Assembly: GCF_001194135.2 (NCBI RefSeq)
Contig: NC_068998.1
Coordinates: 5,841,102-5,884,760 of the forward strand
From: Octopus bimaculoides
Lineage: Eukaryota
DNA length: 43,659 nt
Direction of reading: 5' to 3'
The notes below the pieces were generated by a model. It worked only from the letters and a program-made list of their open reading frames with translations, was not told where the DNA came from and did not search any database. Positions 5,999 to 16,723 of the stretch are shown here, in pieces. The first letter of the stretch is position 1. Each line of letters opens with the position of its first letter. A program made the translations under genes and the position numbers.

Positions 5999-6426
5999 AT
6001 GACAACAGCTAACAGTCATCTTCTCAAGTCCTCTTGTACATCATATAAGAACATACAAGATGATAGTATGCAAAACCATTCCTTCAGGAACTTTGACAAA
6101 TGCGATTCCGATTCGCAGGTGTACAACACCTACAAGCAAATGCACATGTTTCAAACTGTCGACTTTGTGAAAGAATCCCACGGACGATGGACCAGATTCG
6201 ATCAAGCTGAAATGTCCATAATGGAAGCTCTGGAAATGTTAAACAACTTGGTGGATGAATCCGACCCGGACATCGATCTCAGTAACTCTTTCCATGCGTT
6301 TCAAACGGCAGAAGGAATACGTAAAGAGTACCCCGACGAAGACTGGTTTCAGTTGACGGGACTCATACACGACCTGGGTAAAGTTATGGCCCTCTGGGGT
6401 GCACCGCAGTGGTCGGTGGTCGGCGA
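5999..6426 (+). CDS. MIOX: Myo-inositol oxygenase, N-terminal half (rest falls in N-gap 6427-6843)
   Basis: Translation contains the MIOX hallmarks YKQMHMFQTVDFV, LVDESDPDIDLSNSFHAFQTAEGIR and LIHDLGK (HD di-iron motif) and ends PQWSVVG-GA(n), matching the conserved PQW-VVGD. No intron in the 428 visible nt. Residues after the gap in the ORF track are not MIOX. Confidence 0.95.
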
Positions 6427-9734: not shown

Positions 9735-11700
9735 AATCGACTACATCAACTCTAGTTCATGACTGGTACTTTATTTTAGCAACTCCGTGTGGATAAAAGG
9801 CCAAGTTGATCTCGGTGGGATTTGAACTCAGAATGTAAAGAGCTGGAACTAATACTGCAAAGCATTTTTTCCACCCCAACGCTCTAATGAATCTGTTAAT
9901 CTACCCCCAACTCACAATAATAATGATTCAAATTTTGCCATAAGGACAGCAATCTTGGGGAGGGGACTAGTCGATTACATCGCCCTCAGTGCGCATCTGG
10001 TACTTAATTTACAGACCCAAAAGGATGAAAGGCAAAATCGACCTCGGTGGAATTTGAACTCAGAACGTAAAAACGAACGAAATACTGCTAAGCATTTCGT
10101 CCAGCTCGCTGCCTTAATAACAATGCTTTCTACTATAGGCAAAAGGCCTGAAACTTTGGGGGAGGGGGTCTACTCGATTACATAAGCCCCAGTACTCAAC
10201 TGGTACTTATTTTATCGACCCTGAAAGGATGAAAGACAAAGTCTACCTCGGCAGAATTTGAACTCAGAACATAATGGTGGAAGGAATGCTCAACATTTCT
10301 TTTGGCGTGCAGGTTTCTAATTTTGGCACAAGGCCTGTAATTCTGAGGGGGGGGGGGTGCAAACCAGTTGGTAGTATTTCACTAGAATGATGATTATCAT
10401 TACTATTAAAGTTGAACAAAGAAAAATCAAAGTAAATACGAGACGAGAGAGACCAAATGAGTGCAACAGTTCCAACAGTGTCAGAGTTTTGGTTTGAGAG
10501 AAAGTTGTACTTCACACCCTGGCCAAAAGTGAGGCAGCAGAGAGGAGCATTGCACTTTAAATGGAATGAAATGAATGCTAATTTTGGACGAATCAATGTC
10601 TTAGGAAAAAAAAAAAAGTCTTTAGATTCTTTACAGCATCAAATGGTGCTAATCAGGAATGTCTATACTAACCACCACAAAGGACTGGCTATCAGTTTGT
10701 CACAAGTAAAATCCCAAAATGACCGGCTGCATGTCTGACCTGTCTCTTAACAAGCGTGAACTGGAGTGTATATATGGATGATGACGATGATGGGTTTCAC
10801 AGAGGGCAATCAATTAGTTCTGCCTCAGTAGATGGAGAATATTCCATTGATACCGGAAAGATAGCAGGCAAAGTAAATCCTGGAATAATTTGAACTCAGC
10901 GCACAAAAGGGACGTAACTAAATAACAAACAATTGTTTCTAGCAACCCATCCCACCCCGCTGGGCACTGCATCATCTGTAATGGTGTTAGTCTGACAAGG
11001 CATGAGCACTCACAGACTACTCTGAGGCAGATTTTCTACAGCTGGATGCCACTCCTGTCACCAAACCTCACTCGTTTTCACGTGACTGGACATGTTTTCA
11101 GGGAGGAATGGAAATAGAGGAGACATCACTTCCATGCAAATGGCAGCGTACCTTGTTCCTAGTCAGCCATGAAAATGGGTCCAGCTACGATAATTAACTT
11201 TGGCACAAAGCCAGCAATTTTAAAGGAAAGGGCAAGTTGATTACAATGACTCCCCACCCCCACCCCAATACATGACTTGTAATTTATTTTATCGAACCAC
11301 GAAAGAATGAAAGGCAAAGCTGACCTTGGCAGGATTTGAGCCCAGAATGTAAAAAGCCAGAACAAATGCTACTTAGCATTTTGTCCGATGCTCTAACGAT
11401 TCTACCAGCATGGCCTTAATTCTTTCTACCATAGACATATGGCCAAATGTTTTAAAGGGGAGGGGTATCACTGCCATAATAATAATCCTTCCTATTTTCG
11501 GCGCACAAGGCCTGAAATTTGGGGAGAGGGTGCTAGTCGATTACATCGAGCCCAGTGCTAAACTGGTAGTTGTTTTGAAAGGATGAAAGGCTAAGTTAAC
11601 CTTGGCAGAATTTGAGCTTAGAATATAAGGGAGGGTGAAATGCCGCTAAACATTTTGCCCGGTGAACTAACGACTCTGCCAGCTCGTTACAATAATAGCA
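9735..11700 (-). mobile_element. Cluster of at least six co-oriented SINE family E copies and fragments
   Basis: The motif GGATGAAAGGCAAAG..GACCTCGG..GAATTTGAACTCAGAA recurs near 9800, 10030, 10230, 10870, 11310 and 11590. Confidence 0.8.
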
Positions 11701-11961: not shown

Positions 11962-12759
11962 TCAGACAGTTGGTGGCATGTTTCTAATAAGATTCTGAAT
12001 CCTCGACAGGATTATCTCATTGGTGCTACAACAGTTGCCGGGGCCATACGGTGGTAGAATGGTCACAGCGCCAGCCACACACAGACACTTCTCTTTGCCG
12101 TCATCCTGACCCTTTTGTTCTTGCACAGGCAAGCGATTCTTCAGCAGCCATGACTTCAGCTTGTCCTTGTGTTCCGAGAGGGCTTCCTCACTCAGATGGT
12201 TGGTTTCAATGCCGATGTTGCCGCTGTCGCCAAAACCAAGGTGACTGTTCTTGCTGTTGAGGAACAGAGCATCAAGCCTGGCCTTAATTTCTTCATGATC
12301 ACTATCTTTTGGGCCATCGCCACTCCTACTGTCACCACCATTATTTTCATCTTCCTGCAACACAACCACATCGACAACAGCATGTCCTGGAATAACACAG
12401 ACCTCTACACTGGTCTTGGGGGTAGATGCAGGACTAGTAGTATTAGCAGAAATGTCAGAAGCCTTAACTTCAGTAGCAGCAGTAGTGTCACTCGCAGTGG
12501 TTGTGTTTGGAGTGGTGGCAGAGCTACTAGAAGTTCCAGTCTCATTAGCAACCGTGGAGGTAGCGGTATCGGAAACAGCTGTAGGAGGGAAGCGAACAAG
12601 GATGAAGCTGGAAGTGACCGGGTCGACTGTATAGACGTGACCCACATGCTCTTGGTTGGGGCCGGTGTGTACACGGACCTTCTTGTAGATGTACTGCATC
12701 CAGTGAGCAGGGTCTTGGGTGAAAATCGGGTGACAGCTTTCCTCAACCATGGTGGTCAT
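11962..12759 (-). CDS. GEMIN6: Gem-associated protein 6 (SMN complex), single coding exon, 265 aa (262 aa from second ATG)
   Basis: Motifs W-QYIYKKVRV, G-VYTVDPV-SS-ILV-F, VIPGHAV, LKSWL-KN-LP and LCVAGAVTILPPYGPGNCCSTNEIILSRIQNLI match the Gemin6 Sm-like N domain and C-terminal domain. The second ATG (12750) sits in a near-perfect Kozak context, ACCACCATGG. Confidence 0.93.
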   Translation of the reverse strand: MTTMVEESCHPIFTQDPAHWMQYIYKKVRVHTGPNQEHVGHVYTVDPVTSSFILVRFPPTAVSDTATSTVANETGTSSSSATTPNTTTASDTTAATEVKASDISANTTSPASTPKTSVEVCVIPGHAVVDVVVLQEDENNGGDSRSGDGPKDSDHEEIKARLDALFLNSKNSHLGFGDSGNIGIETNHLSEEALSEHKDKLKSWLLKNRLPVQEQKGQDDGKEKCLCVAGAVTILPPYGPGNCCSTNEIILSRIQNLIRNMPPTV

Positions 12760-13185
12760 TTAAGAATCAAACAAGACAAAAAGAGAAATGGAAAGAGGAG
12801 CAATAATAAAAAAAAAGGATAACAGCAAAACTTGGAAAAAGTAACTACTACAACTAATAGGTAACTTGGGCACAAGGCCAGCAATTTTGAGGGAAAGGGG
12901 CAAGTCACTATAATTTTCTATTTTGCTTTTTTTCCTTCAAATTCACAAATTTTCTTTAGAGTTGACAAATATGTTCATACAATTACCAGAATATGAGTCA
13001 AGAGATAAAATCTGCTCATGTGTCTGTATAAGTTAACTTATAAAAAGAAACTGTGTTTGTAGCTGTGAAACTGAATGTATACAAGTGCACACCCTTGCTG
13101 TGAGTCCGTATGTAGGTGAGTAAGTTCAAAGTATCTATAAAAAGCTATGTATGAGTGTGTATGTCTAAGTGGTTTTTATCTGTAA

Positions 13186-13217
<32 letters not shown>

Positions 13218-13497
13218 GTATCTATGAAAAGCTATATTTGTGTTTTTATGGCGTTTATAAGAGAGAATGTATGCATGGTGTATGTTTCCATACAAAGGTG
13301 TACTTGAGTCTGCAAAAGTTTTATATATCTTTGTTAGTGCATATGTATGCACTAGAGATTAAAAAAAAACACACCGCTAAAAGGTAAAACCCCCAAAATG
13401 CTCCAATTGGTTGTTTGGTTAATCCAGTTGCTATGGTTTGATGAGGTTAGAAACAGGATGACAGCAGAGCGTCCTCTGCACAACAGTGGGGAACCGG

Positions 13498-13711
13498 TTA
13501 CCGAGACAAGTTGAAAGTGTGGAAGTTCTTGTATTTCTTTATCAAGTCGCATTTGGTGATGAGCTGTTTACGAAGCACCTCGATGTGTTTCATCTGCTCC
13601 TCCCGTGTGTGCTGGATGCCCGGCATTTTGTCCACAATCTCGCGACCCCGTTGAAGCCGGTTCTTCAAGTCTGTCACTTTCTGGTGCACATCGTGGGAGT
13701 CTTTTTCAATA
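13498..13711 (-). CDS. MED9: Mediator subunit 9, coding exon 2 (terminal)
   Basis: Acceptor ctctttgtcttcag|T ATT GAA; encodes IEKDSHDVHQKVTDLKNRLQRGREIVDKMPGIQHTREEQMKHIEVLRKQLITKCDLIKKYKNFHTFNLSR*, matching the Med9 pattern DKDS-DV---L--LK------R------MPGI----EEQ---L--LR-Q---K--LL-KYK. Confidence 0.93.
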
Positions 13712-15559
13712 CTGAAGACAAAGAGAAAGTATAAAAGACAGAGAGAGAAATGGAAAGAAAAAAATCGGACACTCCTATTTTTTAATAACGAGAGCTTCAA
13801 AACAATTGCTTTCTTCATTATAGTGTAAGAAATCATCATCATCATCCTCATTCAACGTTTGCTTTCCATGCTGGCATGGGTTGGACGGTCTGACTGAGAA
13901 CTGGCAAATCAGAAGACTGCATCAGGCTCCAATCTAATCTGGCAATGTTTCTACAGCTGGATGCCCTCCCTAGCACCAACCACTCCAAAAGTAAAGGGGG
14001 TGCTTTTTACGTGCGACCAGCACGGGAGCCAGTCAGGGGATACTGGCATCGACCACTTTTGGATCGTGCATTTTACGTACCACCAGCATGGAAGCCATGC
14101 TTTCAAGTAGGAAAGCAAACAAACCAAATAAAAACAGCCTATAATTACCCTGACAAGATTGTTATAGCTCGTCAACCCATGCTAGCATGGAAAGCGGACG
14201 TTAAACGATGATAATGATGATCTCCTTATTAATCCATTAGCATATAAACTGGCCAGATACAGCCCCTCACACCTATCCTACAATGGCATTAAAAAAAATA
14301 AAGAAGATCTTGAAGGTATGAGATAATGAATGATTAATTGAAAACATGGAGAATGAATAAGCATTACATTCGACCGAATAATTTCAATATTAAAAAAATG
14401 TAAAATCCCCCTTTGGTTATGAATGACCATGGGATTGCACCTAGAAAGTTACCTTCCAAGGAACAAGTCCAGGCAAAGTTGCTTTATGGAAGACCAGCTG
14501 TTGCCGATGCATACCAGCCTCCCCTTTACATGCCACTGATGTTGTCCAAGGGAAAACAAAGGCAAAAGCCGACAGAACTTGGCACCAGTGACATCACAAC
14601 TCATTTCTACAGCTGAGTGAACTGGACCAACGTGAAAACAAAGTGTCTTGCTCAAGAACACAACATACAGTCTGGTCTGGGAATCGAACTCGCTACCTCA
14701 GGATTGTGAGTCTGACTCCCTAGCCACTGAATCATGCAACTTCAGTCAATGCTAAATAAACAGTTAATAAATATGTTGACAACATAATACATGTTTTCAG
14801 GGATTCTCAAGCCTGTACACACCTGTTAGCTGTCGTTTATATAGGTCAGAGCAGATGCAGTAAAGGTAAAAAAAATAAAATTTAAAAAAAAAGGTGGGAC
14901 AAAAAAGGGAAAAAAGAATTTAAAAAAACAACTTGGGGTGGGACAGCATCTTGAAAAATGTAGCAAGCACTGTCACTTATCAAACAGTCTTGTAACACTG
15001 AGACCATCTCGTCTATATGAAATCTACAGTATACTTAAAATTGTTTCTATGTCAACTGCATGTTGGTGAGGAAATCGTGGATTATTGGGGATGGAGTAAA
15101 TAAATAAATCAAGGGAGATTTACATACTTACAAAAAAAAAAAAAAAAAATCTTAGCCATACAAATACAGAATTGGAATGTAGACGGATTCAATGCCATTG
15201 TCGTTTGAGTTTATCTGTGGAAGTAACTTACATGTGAAGGGAGAGAATTCGATAAAACCAAGTTATGTGATTAATCAGTGGCTTAATTTCACCTCCCAGT
15301 TTCGCTTCACGGTTGTGGCCACTCCCCACTGAAGGGGCCACAAATAGTCTTAAATGAAAATTAAAGATAAACGCTGCCAGATTTCAATTTCTTCTACTTT
15401 GCTACCATAATTTCATTTTAAACAACTTCGTATAAAAACAAACTGTGGTTTAGGTCAGAGTCAGACCCAATAAAAGAAACTTATGAACCAAAAAAAATGT
15501 TCTTTTATAGAAATAGTACATTTCTAAATCTCTCAGAGATTTATGCAGTAGCGATACGA

Positions 15560-15733
15560 TGAAGTAGTTGTATGCTGTCAACTTAATGTGACAGTCCCAT
15601 GAAAGGAATAATAAGGACACAGGAAATGTGTCAAGGCCGACAGGAAGCGGTGCAGCTTCCTAGGTCTAACCAACAGCGGTATTATTCCCTTCAGGGGACG
15701 GTCACATTAAGTTGACAGCATACAACTACTTCA
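15560..15733. mobile_element. 174-bp foldback element with 54-bp terminal inverted repeats
   Basis: Arms 15560-15613 and 15680-15733 are reverse complements (first 33 bp perfect, 3 mismatches in total) with a 66-bp spacer. Confidence 0.75.
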
Positions 15734-16624
15734 AAAAAATGTTCTGTCCATAAGCAGTCTATTCTTTTTTTTCAGTCACAGTGTATCTAGGACTACATTA
15801 TTGAATGTATTTCTCCTCATGAAGACAATAGAATGTGATTTGAGGCAACAAATTTAGGAGGTGCTTTCTTTTCTAACCGACAGAGATTTCTTTGAGCAGT
15901 TTGCCAATTGCTTATCTACATTGGTGAGGATTTCTCCATGGAACAATCGATATCCTGGAGTTAAAACCCCAAAAGGGAAAATTTCCGAAATAGAAAATAA
16001 ACTCGCCAATAGTCTCAATCTCTTGAGTCTGTATCTAAAACATTTCGTTAAAAAAAAAAAAAAAATGGACAATTTTTCTTCTTTGAAAACTAAGAGTTAA
16101 ATTACATGTGCGTCTTGAATTAGATGTTTTTGAGTTCTTATTGGTTGTGTGATTCGAGTTGTATAATATAACCACATGTGGTTAGAGTTCTATTATAATT
16201 TGTATAAAACGAGTTATCTACATGAAATAAAACACAACAGAATGAAATACAAGTTTAAAAGCGCAGAAATTATAAATCAATATATAATAACACATTAACA
16301 AAAGAAAACTAAATTTATCTAAGTGAATTACACAAAATAACTCAGACAAAACATAAATAGAAGTATATAAATTTCTACCGGTCGTTTATATATGTGTATT
16401 TCTTTTTATAAAAGCAAACATTTAATTTTAAAAGTAATTCATAATTACAAAATAAATTAATTAATGGAAGAAATTAAATGAACAAAATCAAAAAAAAATC
16501 AACAAACCGTTAAATAAACAAGAAATAGGTTTTTGTTCGTTTTTTTTTTTGTTAGTGATTATGTTAAGAAAGTAGAAAGGTTAATGTTTGAAAAAAACGG
16601 ACAAAATATTTCTGTTGGTCTTAC

Positions 16625-16686
16625 CTTCGAATTATTTCATAAATTATTTGAAGGAAACTCAGGTCGTTTTCGACATTTTTCGCCAT
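16625..16686 (-). CDS. MED9: Mediator subunit 9, coding exon 1
   Basis: ATG GCG AAA ... ATT CGA AG|gtaag encodes MAKNVENDLSFLQIIYEIIR. The phase-2 donor joins exon 2 (AG+T = Ser); total 276 nt = 91 aa + stop. FL-II-EII fits the Med9 FLP---I motif. Confidence 0.9.
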
Positions 16687-16723
16687 GTTAGACACCAACA
16701 GGAAGTTCCGTTAAGCACGTGAC
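16681..16723 (-). promoter_or_regulatory. MED9 core promoter motifs: YY1-like AACATGGCG over the start codon, ETS-like CAGGAAGT (16699-16706), E-box CACGTGAC (16716-16723)
   Basis: Three housekeeping-type motifs within about 40 bp of the MED9 ATG. The motif matches are seen in the sequence; function is inferred. Confidence 0.5.

What the first reader, a model, noticed from the sequence alone, without database searches (positions are those of the whole stretch)
11962..16686. MED9 and GEMIN6 may be one transcription unit (bicistronic or alternative terminal exon)
Seen: the MED9 stop (13498) and GEMIN6 ATG (12759) are on the same strand, 738 bp apart. On that strand I find no AATAAA or ATTAAA between them, only weak variants (TATAAA, CATAAA, GATAAA). 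There is also no motif cluster like the one at the MED9 start; the spacer is mostly a (CA)n tract and a SINE fragment. GEMIN6 has no coding intron and is preceded by a pyrimidine-rich, AG-free stretch (12830 to about 12745) resembling a 3' splice region. Its second ATG has a near-perfect Kozak context. Also seen: the MED9 exon-1 donor (phase 2, AG|) would join in frame to AAG|C at 12737/12736, recreating GEMIN6 Ser8. Inference: GEMIN6 is translated from a MED9 read-through mRNA, or is an alternative last exon sharing the MED9 promoter. Either would couple a Mediator subunit to an snRNP-assembly factor. I do not know of this arrangement being described, but cannot check.
Basis: partly seen in the sequence, partly recalled or inferred. 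Interest (0 to 1): 0.8.

Follow-up and report, generated by a model that had tools for sequence, protein, structure and literature searches.

The report
Ancient MED9–GEMIN6 two-gene messenger RNA

Summary
The window is Octopus bimaculoides chromosome CM046618.1. The gene identities and coordinates are right. MED9 has two coding exons (16686-16625 and 13711-13498, minus strand). An intronless GEMIN6 ORF follows on the same strand (12759/12750-11962).

- The lack of AATAAA/ATTAAA in the 738-nt gap is what chance gives (P about 0.4).
- The (CA)n tract and SINE piece cover only about 10% of the gap.
- The in-frame splice join is a 1-in-3 event and is not conserved.

The core idea is nevertheless strongly supported by comparison.
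- Assembled cDNA contigs from Sepia pharaonis RNA-seq, three further cephalopod runs, an oyster and an unidentified spiralian have the MED9 intron spliced out. They run through a 41-134 nt gap free of poly(A) signals straight into GEMIN6.
- In genomic DNA the gap is 57 nt in a gastropod and 47 nt in an oyster. In the polychaete Paralvinella it is -1 or 11 nt, with a UGAUG stop/start overlap.

So this is an old lophotrochozoan dicistronic gene, and I found no description of it in the searchable literature. Octopods inflated the gap to 660-750 nt. Whether they still co-transcribe the pair is inferred (about 0.6), not shown. The alternative-terminal-exon idea has no support.

The parts
16701..16721 (-). 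MED9 core promoter motifs: E-box CACGTG (16721-16716) and ETS-like ACTTCC (16706-16701), 15-35 nt upstream of the ATG
   Evidence: Conserved in O. sinensis and in Argonauta (CACATG / ACTTCCGG). Sepia cDNA contigs begin at GAGACTTCCGG, 19-22 nt before the ATG. No such motifs occur in the MED9-GEMIN6 gap.
16625..16686 (-). MED9 coding exon 1 (ATG at 16686, 20 codons plus 2 nt, donor AAG|GTAAGA)
   Evidence: The junction position is identical to the exon1|exon2 junction seen in spliced cDNA contigs L004-L007, L015 and L048.
13712..16624 (-). MED9 intron (2913 nt, phase 2). It contains an optional 117-nt in-frame cassette exon (15348-15232) used in an older gene model.
13498..13711 (-). MED9 coding exon 2, ending in stop TAA (13500-13498). 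The complete product is 91 aa.
   Evidence: Pfam Med9 3.7e-19. Identical to XP_014771492.1.
12760..13497 (-). Intercistronic gap (738 nt to the first ATG, 747 nt to the conserved second ATG). It has no AATAAA/ATTAAA and 5 short uORFs of 2-19 codons. It includes (CA)13 at 13193-13219 and a 44-nt SINE-like fragment at 12862-12905.
   Evidence: About 88-90% identical to O. sinensis, which is roughly the neutral level. The homologous gap is 41-134 nt in cDNA contigs of relatives.
12760..12830 (-). Pyrimidine-rich, AG-free tract directly upstream of GEMIN6 (77% C+T in the last 60 nt)
   Evidence: The last ~30 nt are nearly identical in a third octopod (L002). C/T-rich sense-strand tracts are also present before GEMIN6 in Argonauta and in decapodiform cDNAs. 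No unusual RNA structure (z -0.12).
11962..12759 (-). GEMIN6 ORF, intronless. It is 265 aa from the ATG at 12759 and 262 aa from the conserved Kozak-context ATG at 12750. An S/T-rich insert of roughly 90 aa lies at about 12588-12310.
   Evidence: Pfam Gemin6 5.9e-09 and Gemin6_C 2.9e-22. Under purifying selection (dN/dS 0.18-0.37 against two other octopods).
11283..11288 (-). First canonical AATAAA downstream of GEMIN6 (674 nt after the stop), a candidate shared poly(A) signal
   Evidence: Function not tested.

Best explanation
The window holds the octopus copy of an old lophotrochozoan dicistronic gene.

Ancestral state, shown in relatives:
- One promoter lies next to the MED9 start codon.
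- One pre-mRNA is made, whose only intron lies in MED9.
- A short gap free of poly(A) signals follows MED9.
- An intronless GEMIN6 ORF comes next.
- AATAAA/ATTAAA hexamers, the presumed poly(A) signals, follow shortly after GEMIN6 in the Sepia-like and oyster contigs.
- The mature mRNA therefore carries both reading frames.

Translation (inferred): GEMIN6, the second cistron, is most likely translated by ribosomes that finish the 91-codon MED9 frame, stay on the mRNA and re-initiate (termination-reinitiation).

Octopods: the gap was inflated to 660-750 nt by microsatellites, a SINE piece and other sequence. It kept its orientation, has no canonical poly(A) hexamer (as chance would give), has no more AUGs than shuffles give (all opening uORFs of 19 codons or fewer), and gained none of the E-box or ETS motifs seen at the MED9 start. 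The most likely reading is that octopus GEMIN6 is still made from the MED9-promoted transcript. This last step is inferred, not shown.
For: Shown:
- Gene identities. The window is O. bimaculoides CM046618.1.
- Contigs L004, L005, L006 and L007 come from four sequencing runs. L005 is from SRR3011300, a Sepia pharaonis whole-animal transcriptome (PMC5541922). All four contain MED9 with the intron removed exactly at the octopus exon boundary, then 123-134 nt, then a 178-180 aa GEMIN6. AATAAA lies 73 nt after the GEMIN6 stop in L004.
- Contig L008, which still carries the intron, shows the same exon 2-gap-GEMIN6 order, so the contigs are not chimeras.
- Oyster contig L015 has spliced MED9, a 41-nt gap, GEMIN6 and then ATTAAA/AATAAA.
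- L048, an unidentified spiralian whose closest relatives are Owenia and oysters, has spliced MED9, a 56-nt gap and GEMIN6.
- Genomic gaps: Gigantopelta 57 nt and Saccostrea 47 nt. Paralvinella palmiformis -1 or 11 nt, with cUGAUGg. Two further metagenome contigs 31-32 nt.
- None of the gaps of 134 nt or less has AATAAA/ATTAAA. All have 0 or 1 ATG.
- Octopods: O. sinensis and Argonauta have the same order and strand, with gaps of 700 and 661 nt, 0 canonical hexamers and 6 and 1 ATG. Shuffles give 8.6 and 3.8 ATG.
- In contrast, contig L071 has a 718-nt gap with 2 AATAAA and 21 ATG, which is what an uncoupled pair looks like.
- GEMIN6 is under purifying selection in octopods.

Inferred:
- Reinitiation, because MED9 starts in a strong context (A/G at -3, G at +4).
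- MED9 also contains many internal AUGs, which excludes leaky scanning (sequence).
- The short gaps are almost ATG-free, and one species has a stop/start overlap.
Against: - No octopus transcript spanning 13497-12760 was obtained.
- The only octopod contig with GEMIN6 (L002, library type unknown) starts 63 nt upstream of the ATG, at the edge of the SINE-like fragment, and says nothing either way.
- A 738-nt gap with five uORFs would make reinitiation at GEMIN6 inefficient.
- The gap is no better conserved between two Octopus species than neutral sequence and shows no unusual RNA structure, so no IRES-like element is evident.
- Absence of canonical poly(A) hexamers is not significant. Weak variants are present.
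- The cDNA contigs prove that dicistronic RNA exists in relatives, not that it is the only or the translated form.
Confidence: 0.62

Rival explanations
1. Octopods have uncoupled the pair. MED9 mRNA ends inside the enlarged gap at a non-canonical poly(A) signal. GEMIN6 is transcribed from a newly acquired promoter in the gap, for example a pyrimidine (TCT-type) initiator in the C/T-rich tract, or the TATA-like ATATATAAAAC at 13327. The tandem order would then be only a relic of the ancestral dicistronic gene.
For: - The gap grew about 6- to 15-fold relative to other molluscs.
- It contains TATAAA, CATAAA and GATAAA variants.
- It has five uORFs that would hinder reinitiation.
- CTCTTTCC, about 35 nt before the ATG, fits the TCT initiator consensus as I recall it. 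This was not tested.
- Another lineage (L071) with a 718-nt gap looks uncoupled.
Against: - No E-box, ETS or YY1-type motifs occur in the gap.
- In Argonauta the gap is almost wholly microsatellite up to 25 nt before the ATG.
- There are no canonical poly(A) hexamers in any of three octopods, and ATG counts are at or below shuffle expectation.
- The gap shows no conservation above the neutral level that would mark a promoter.
Confidence: 0.3
2. GEMIN6 is an alternative last exon of MED9. The exon-1 donor (after 16625) splices to an acceptor inside the GEMIN6 5' end (AAG|C at 12737/12736), giving a MED9(1-20)-GEMIN6 fusion protein.
For: The join is in frame, and an 88-nt AG-free pyrimidine tract precedes it. 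A 24-nt stretch of that tract resembles the real 3' end of the MED9 intron (12773-12796 against 13735-13758, 92%).
Against: - None of the spliced contigs from cuttlefish, the other cephalopod, oyster or L048 shows such a junction. All include MED9 exon 2.
- The first AG after the tract is at 12743/12742 and would be out of frame.
- The frame match is a 1/3 chance and fails in Argonauta and Sepia (sequences).
- Both ATGs and a Kozak-context start are kept, which a pure acceptor exon would not need.
Confidence: 0.04
3. The pair is an operon of the nematode or tunicate type. A polycistronic precursor is resolved by spliced-leader trans-splicing at an acceptor in front of GEMIN6, so that mature mRNAs are monocistronic.
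For: There are short same-strand gaps and a pyrimidine tract before GEMIN6. In Sepia, TTTCTTCAG lies 8 nt before the ATG.
Against: - The contigs carry both cistrons with the MED9 intron already removed, so they are processed RNAs that remain dicistronic.
- No contig shows a foreign leader in front of GEMIN6.
- The AG before the ATG is not conserved: it is absent in L006/L007 and in Octopus.
- Spliced-leader trans-splicing is not known in molluscs or annelids, to my knowledge.
Confidence: 0.03

Closest known systems
Dicistronic protein-coding genes of Drosophila (e.g. stoned A/B, Adh/Adhr). Drosophila MED9 itself appears paired with CG42518.
   Same: Two unrelated, non-overlapping ORFs lie on one capped, spliced, polyadenylated mRNA with a short gap, and the downstream ORF depends on non-canonical initiation. 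One P-element insertion is named as an allele of both MED9 and CG42518 (PMC4978919). That fits my recollection that fly MED9 is the first cistron of a dicistronic gene.
   Different: The downstream partner is different. Gemin6 is reported as lost from drosophilids (PMC6385987). The pair found here is lophotrochozoan and conserved across phyla. The fly examples are from my own knowledge and were not tested here.
Mammalian SNURF-SNRPN bicistronic mRNA
   Same: A short upstream ORF is followed on the same mRNA by an snRNP-related protein (from my own knowledge). In both cases the downstream product belongs to the Sm / Sm-like world.
   Different: SNURF-SNRPN is imprinted and multi-exonic, and its ORFs are spread over ten exons. 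Here the second cistron is intronless and the upstream one is a Mediator subunit. There is no sequence relationship.
Termination-reinitiation in caliciviruses and influenza B segment 7 (overlapping UAAUG / AUGA stop-start)
   Same: Tight or overlapping stop/start (UGAUG in Paralvinella), very short ATG-free gaps, and an upstream ORF that is fully translated.
   Different: The viral cases need an upstream 18S-complementary element (TURBS). I did not find a conserved UGGGA-type motif by eye and could not test 18S pairing. The mollusc gaps are 31-134 nt, longer than in the viral cases.
Spliced-leader operons of nematodes and tunicates
   Same: Same-strand genes with gaps of about 100 nt or less transcribed from one promoter.
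   Different: There the precursor is cut into monocistronic mRNAs by trans-splicing. Here spliced contigs stay dicistronic.
Read-through / conjoined genes of vertebrates
   Same: Transcription from an upstream gene continues into the downstream neighbour.
   Different: Conjoined transcripts usually skip the upstream terminal exon and make fusion proteins, and few are conserved. Here the upstream stop codon is retained and the arrangement is conserved between phyla.

Membership tests
Eukaryotic dicistronic (bicistronic) mRNA gene | Two complete, non-overlapping ORFs for unrelated proteins, same strand, adjacent | tested here: met
   MED9 (Pfam Med9) and GEMIN6 (Pfam Gemin6 plus Gemin6_C) lie on the minus strand 738 nt apart.
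Eukaryotic dicistronic (bicistronic) mRNA gene | Both ORFs present on one processed (spliced) RNA molecule | tested here: inconclusive
   Met in relatives: L004-L007 (cephalopods, including Sepia pharaonis RNA-seq), L015 (oyster) and L048 have the MED9 intron removed and both ORFs present. Not testable for the octopus window itself, because no octopus transcript across the gap was available.
Eukaryotic dicistronic (bicistronic) mRNA gene | No polyadenylation site or promoter between the cistrons | tested here: inconclusive
   There is no AATAAA/ATTAAA in any gap of 134 nt or less, nor in three octopod gaps. In octopus this is what chance gives (P 0.41), and weak variants exist. No MED9-type promoter motifs are present. 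Real 3' and 5' ends were not mapped.
Eukaryotic dicistronic (bicistronic) mRNA gene | Downstream ORF translated from the dicistronic mRNA | not testable with these tools
   Needs ribosome profiling, reporters or proteomics. Indirect evidence only: GEMIN6 is under purifying selection (dN/dS 0.18-0.37), and the arrangement is conserved across molluscs and an annelid.
Eukaryotic dicistronic (bicistronic) mRNA gene | Arrangement conserved in evolution (not a one-off read-through) | tested here: met
   Found in cephalopods (Octopus x2, Argonauta, Sepia and others), a gastropod, oysters, the polychaete Paralvinella and unidentified spiralians. Not detected upstream of Gemin6 in 29 closely related JGI metagenome contigs (L018-L046, taxon not determined) or in 10 insect-like contigs (L063-L069, L073-L074) with up to 3 kb of flank. 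Priapulus MED9 has a different downstream neighbour.
Spliced-leader-resolved operon | Mature mRNAs monocistronic, with the downstream one carrying a trans-spliced leader | tested here: not met
   Spliced contigs remain dicistronic, and no foreign leader is seen before GEMIN6.
Conjoined gene / alternative terminal exon | Splice junction from an upstream-gene exon into the downstream gene, skipping the upstream terminal exon | tested here: not met
   No such junction appears in any of six spliced contigs from relatives. The in-frame property is not conserved. Octopus RNA was not available, so a minor isoform cannot be excluded.
Termination-reinitiation (coupled translation) | Stop of ORF1 close to or overlapping the start of ORF2, with no intervening AUG | tested here: inconclusive
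   Met in Paralvinella (UGAUG, or 11 nt) and in gaps of 31-57 nt with 0-1 ATG in oysters, the gastropod and others. Not met in the octopus window (738 nt, five uORFs).
Termination-reinitiation (coupled translation) | Dependence of ORF2 translation on ORF1 termination, or an rRNA-tethering element | not testable with these tools
   Needs reporter assays with moved or removed stop codons. 18S complementarity was not examined.

The most novel reading that the evidence does not exclude
MED9-GEMIN6 is a translationally coupled dicistronic mRNA that has been kept since before molluscs and annelids split. It ties the dosage of a Mediator middle-module subunit to that of an SMN-complex subunit. Octopods still use it despite a 700-nt gap, which would require an unusually processive reinitiation or a pyrimidine-tract-dependent internal entry mechanism on a cellular mRNA.
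Probability: 0.3. Interest if true: 0.7.

Novelty: new member of a known kind. Interest (0 to 1): 0.55.

Why it matters
Conserved dicistronic nuclear mRNAs are rare in animals outside lineages with spliced-leader operons. None has been described for molluscs or annelids in the literature I could search.

- **A model for reinitiation.** The pair has been kept for roughly half a billion years, with gaps ranging from a stop/start overlap to about 130 nt. That makes it a ready-made natural model for how ribosomes re-initiate after a 91-codon reading frame. The octopod 700-nt version is a built-in natural 'spacer-length experiment'.
- **Annotation.** The Argonauta annotation used here has no GEMIN6 gene call although the ORF is present, so second cistrons can go unannotated.
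- **Biology.** Any link between Mediator and snRNP assembly is unproven. The pairing may be a frozen accident.

Tried and rejected
1. Direct octopus transcript evidence. Exact-protein look-ups found only genomic records for O. bimaculoides and O. sinensis, plus one 1073-nt octopod contig (L002) of unknown library type that starts 63 nt before the ATG at a repeat edge. This is uninformative.
2. Poly(A)-signal absence as evidence. Rejected as non-significant. It also holds for GEMIN6's own 3' flank.
3. ATG depletion in octopod gaps. There is only a trend (P 0.08-0.19).
4. Conservation of the gap between two Octopus species. It is about neutral, so no functional element can be inferred.
5. Structured RNA or known RNA families in the gap. 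None found (Rfam; folding z +0.73 and -0.12).
6. The bacterial-type promoter/terminator scan is irrelevant to this eukaryotic locus.
7. The gap as an intron, or a MED9-GEMIN6 fusion through the GGTAAC at the MED9 stop. The frame fits only in Octopus, not in Argonauta. Sepia has no GT there. Rejected as chance.
8. My recollection that a Drosophila Gemin is encoded dicistronically was not borne out by PMC6385987 and is dropped.
9. Literature searches for MED9 or Gemin6 with bicistronic/dicistronic, and for cephalopod or mollusc dicistronic genes, found only expression-vector uses.
10. Leaky scanning as the mechanism. Rejected because MED9 has a strong start context and many internal AUGs.

Full report
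**What is in the window**

The window matches Octopus bimaculoides assembly GCA_001194135.2, chromosome record CM046618.1.

On the minus strand, a 91-aa MED9 is encoded by two exons: 16686-16625 and 13711-13498. They are separated by a 2913-nt phase-2 intron. The product hits Pfam Med9 at E 3.7e-19 and equals XP_014771492.1.

An uninterrupted ORF starts 738 nt after the MED9 stop and runs from 12759 to 11962. It carries the Gemin6 Sm-like domain and the Gemin6 C-terminal domain.

The second ATG (12750, ACCACCATGG) is the likely start. It is the one shared with Argonauta, and the 262-aa database version of the protein begins there.

The ORF is under purifying selection against two other octopods (dN/dS 0.18-0.37), so it is a working gene.

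The coordinates and most details hold:
- No AATAAA or ATTAAA lies between the genes, only TATAAA, CATAAA and GATAAA.
- The tract 12830-12745 is AG-free and pyrimidine-rich.
- The exon-1 donor joined to 12737/12736 is in frame.
- The E-box and ETS-like motifs conserved next to the MED9 start (16721-16701) have no counterpart in the gap.

Three points are weaker than stated:
- Zero canonical hexamers in 747 nt is expected by chance (0.86 expected, P(0)=0.41). GEMIN6's own 3' flank also lacks AATAAA for 674 nt.
- The (CA)n tract is 27 nt and the SINE-like piece about 44 nt. Together they are about a tenth of the gap, not most of it.
- The frame match is a one-in-three event. The first AG after the tract (12743/12742) would be out of frame.

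**Transcript-level evidence from relatives**

A search with the octopus MED9 protein returned 91-aa proteins found on short contigs assembled from public sequencing runs. Looking up those contigs gave four from four runs: L004, L005, L006 and L007.

In each, MED9 is contiguous. The intron is removed exactly at the octopus exon boundary (...ATTCGAAG|TATAGAAAAGGA...). MED9 is followed after 123-134 nt by a 178-180 aa GEMIN6 ORF on the same molecule.

The run behind L005, SRR3011300, is a Sepia pharaonis whole-animal transcriptome (PMC5541922). L004 is 96% identical to L005. L006 and L007 belong to a second, more distant cephalopod (Gemin6 73% identical to the Sepia-like one).

A contig from another run (L008) still contains intron sequence and shows the same exon 2-gap-GEMIN6 order. 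The dicistronic contigs are therefore not assembly chimeras.

In L004, AATAAA lies 73 nt after the GEMIN6 stop. No such signal lies between the cistrons.

**Depth of conservation**

| Taxon or contig | Type | Gap (nt) |
|---|---|---|
| Paralvinella palmiformis (polychaete) | genomic | -1 (cUGAUGg overlap), or 11 to the annotated start |
| L049, L050 (unidentified) | metagenome contigs | 31-32 |
| L015 (oyster) | spliced cDNA contig | 41 |
| Saccostrea cucullata (oyster) | genomic | 47 |
| L048 (unidentified spiralian) | spliced contig | 56 |
| Gigantopelta aegis (gastropod) | genomic | 57 |
| Sepia-like and second cephalopod | spliced cDNA contigs | 123-134 |
| L053 (unidentified) | metagenome contig | 255 |
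| Argonauta, O. sinensis, O. bimaculoides | genomic | 661, 700, 747 (to the conserved second ATG) |
| L071 (unidentified) | metagenome contig | 718 |

- The oyster locus is hemmed in by VPS35L upstream (divergent) and a helicase gene downstream (convergent).
- The oyster contig L015 goes on to ATTAAA/AATAAA after GEMIN6.
- L048 is closest to Owenia and oysters.
- All gaps of 134 nt or less lack canonical poly(A) hexamers and have 0 or 1 ATG.

The linkage is not universal:
- Twenty-nine closely related Gemin6 contigs from JGI metagenomes (L018-L046, taxon not determined) show no MED9 exon in up to 3 kb upstream. The same holds for ten insect-like contigs (L063-L069, L073-L074).
- Contig L071 has a 718-nt gap with two AATAAA and 21 ATG, and looks uncoupled.
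- In Priapulus, MED9 is followed by a UQCC2/CBP6-family ORF instead.

**The octopod state**

O. sinensis and Argonauta hians have the same order and strand, with gaps of 700 and 661 nt. The enlargement is therefore shared by Octopus and Argonauta.

The Argonauta gap is almost entirely (CA)n, (CT)n and (TA)n. All three octopod gaps lack canonical poly(A) hexamers.

Their ATG counts are 6, 6 and 1, against 9.9, 8.6 and 3.8 in shuffles. This is a trend only (P 0.08-0.19).

In the window, the five upstream ATGs open uORFs of 2-19 codons. All of them end well before GEMIN6.

The gap is about as diverged between the two Octopus species as synonymous sites and the intron. It has no unusual predicted structure and no Rfam match. 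Only the last ~30 nt before the ATG stand out as nearly identical in a third octopod (L002).

**Most likely mechanism**

*Shown in relatives:* one processed RNA carries both frames. AATAAA/ATTAAA hexamers follow GEMIN6 in the Sepia-like and oyster contigs, and none lies between the frames. No poly(A) tail was seen on any contig.

*Inferred:* a single promoter next to the MED9 ATG. Contigs start 6-26 nt upstream of that ATG, and E-box and ETS-type motifs are conserved there.

*Inferred:* translation of GEMIN6 by termination-reinitiation.
- Leaky scanning is unlikely, because MED9 starts in a strong context and holds many internal AUGs.
- A trans-spliced operon is unlikely, because the spliced contigs stay dicistronic.

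For the octopus window I put co-transcription at about 0.6. The main rival, at about 0.3, is that the enlarged gap now holds a MED9 3' end and a new GEMIN6 promoter. The alternative-last-exon or fusion idea gets about 0.04.

**Comparison with known systems, and novelty**

In kind, this is a eukaryotic dicistronic gene of the sort catalogued in Drosophila and exemplified in mammals by SNURF-SNRPN (both from my own knowledge).

Keyword searches of the held literature returned only recombinant co-expression work. They covered MED9 or Gemin6 together with bicistronic or dicistronic, and dicistronic genes in cephalopods and molluscs.

I therefore rate it a new member of a known kind. It is notable for its age and for the natural series of gap lengths.

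**Limits**

- The species behind several runs and metagenome contigs are unknown.
- Contigs show that dicistronic RNA exists, not how abundant it is or whether it is translated.
- No experiment-level data for the octopus were accessible.

Noticed in passing
L051:851-868 (Paralvinella palmiformis host contig in a JGI metagenome): The MED9 stop and a GEMIN6-frame ATG overlap as cUGAUGg. The annotated GEMIN6 start (KAK2169425.1) is 11 nt further on. This is the tightest coupling seen in any taxon.
   Followed up: partly
L013:10001-14625 (Priapulus caudatus): An intronless MED9 is followed on the same strand by a UQCC2/CBP6-family ORF after 134 nt and by TFIIE-alpha after a further 238 nt. MED9 may therefore be a recurrent first cistron with different partners. 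In Drosophila, one P-element insertion is named as an allele of both MED9 and CG42518 (PMC4978919).
   Followed up: partly
window 15232-15348 (minus strand, inside the MED9 intron): An older O. bimaculoides MED9 model (130 aa, P0082) includes an in-frame 117-nt cassette exon here, with acceptor tttaag| and donor |gtaagt. It would insert 39 residues into the Med9 domain. Whether it is really used is unknown.
   Followed up: partly
window 12310-12588 (minus strand): Octopod GEMIN6 carries an insert of roughly 90 aa, rich in Ser/Thr/Ala, between the Sm-like and C-terminal domains. This makes it 262-272 aa (longer still in Argonauta) against 171-197 aa in other molluscs. The insert evolves faster (dN/dS 0.27-0.50) than the domains. 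An unrelated metagenome contig (L057) has an insert at the same place.
   Followed up: partly
L010:12614-13555 (Argonauta hians): A clear GEMIN6 ORF lies 661 nt after MED9, but the gene calls listed for this locus contain no GEMIN6. The second cistron was missed by annotation.
   Followed up: partly
window 12773-12796 and 13735-13758: The pyrimidine tract just upstream of GEMIN6 shares a 24-nt, 92% identical stretch (CTTTCCATTTCTCT...) with the polypyrimidine tract at the 3' end of the MED9 intron. This may be chance between two low-complexity tracts.
   Followed up: no
window 6077-6424 (+ strand): An exon of a MIOX (myo-inositol oxygenase) gene, 86% identical to Argonauta MIOX residues 34-149. 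MIOX is also the neighbour beyond GEMIN6 in O. sinensis and Argonauta. VPS35L is the divergent neighbour of MED9 in Argonauta and in the oyster.
   Followed up: partly
L071:1068-1787 (unidentified metagenome contig): This MED9-GEMIN6 pair has a 718-nt gap containing two AATAAA and 21 ATG, and GEMIN6 is split by introns. It appears to be a lineage in which the pair has become two ordinary genes, and is a useful contrast to octopods.
   Followed up: no
window 16681-16690; L004:1-30; L015:1-12: The MED9 start codon sits in AACATGGCG / ATCATGGCG / GTATGGCGG, which resembles the YY1/TISU element of genes with very short 5' leaders. This is a recollection and was not tested. The cDNA contigs begin only 6-26 nt upstream of the ATG.
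   Followed up: no
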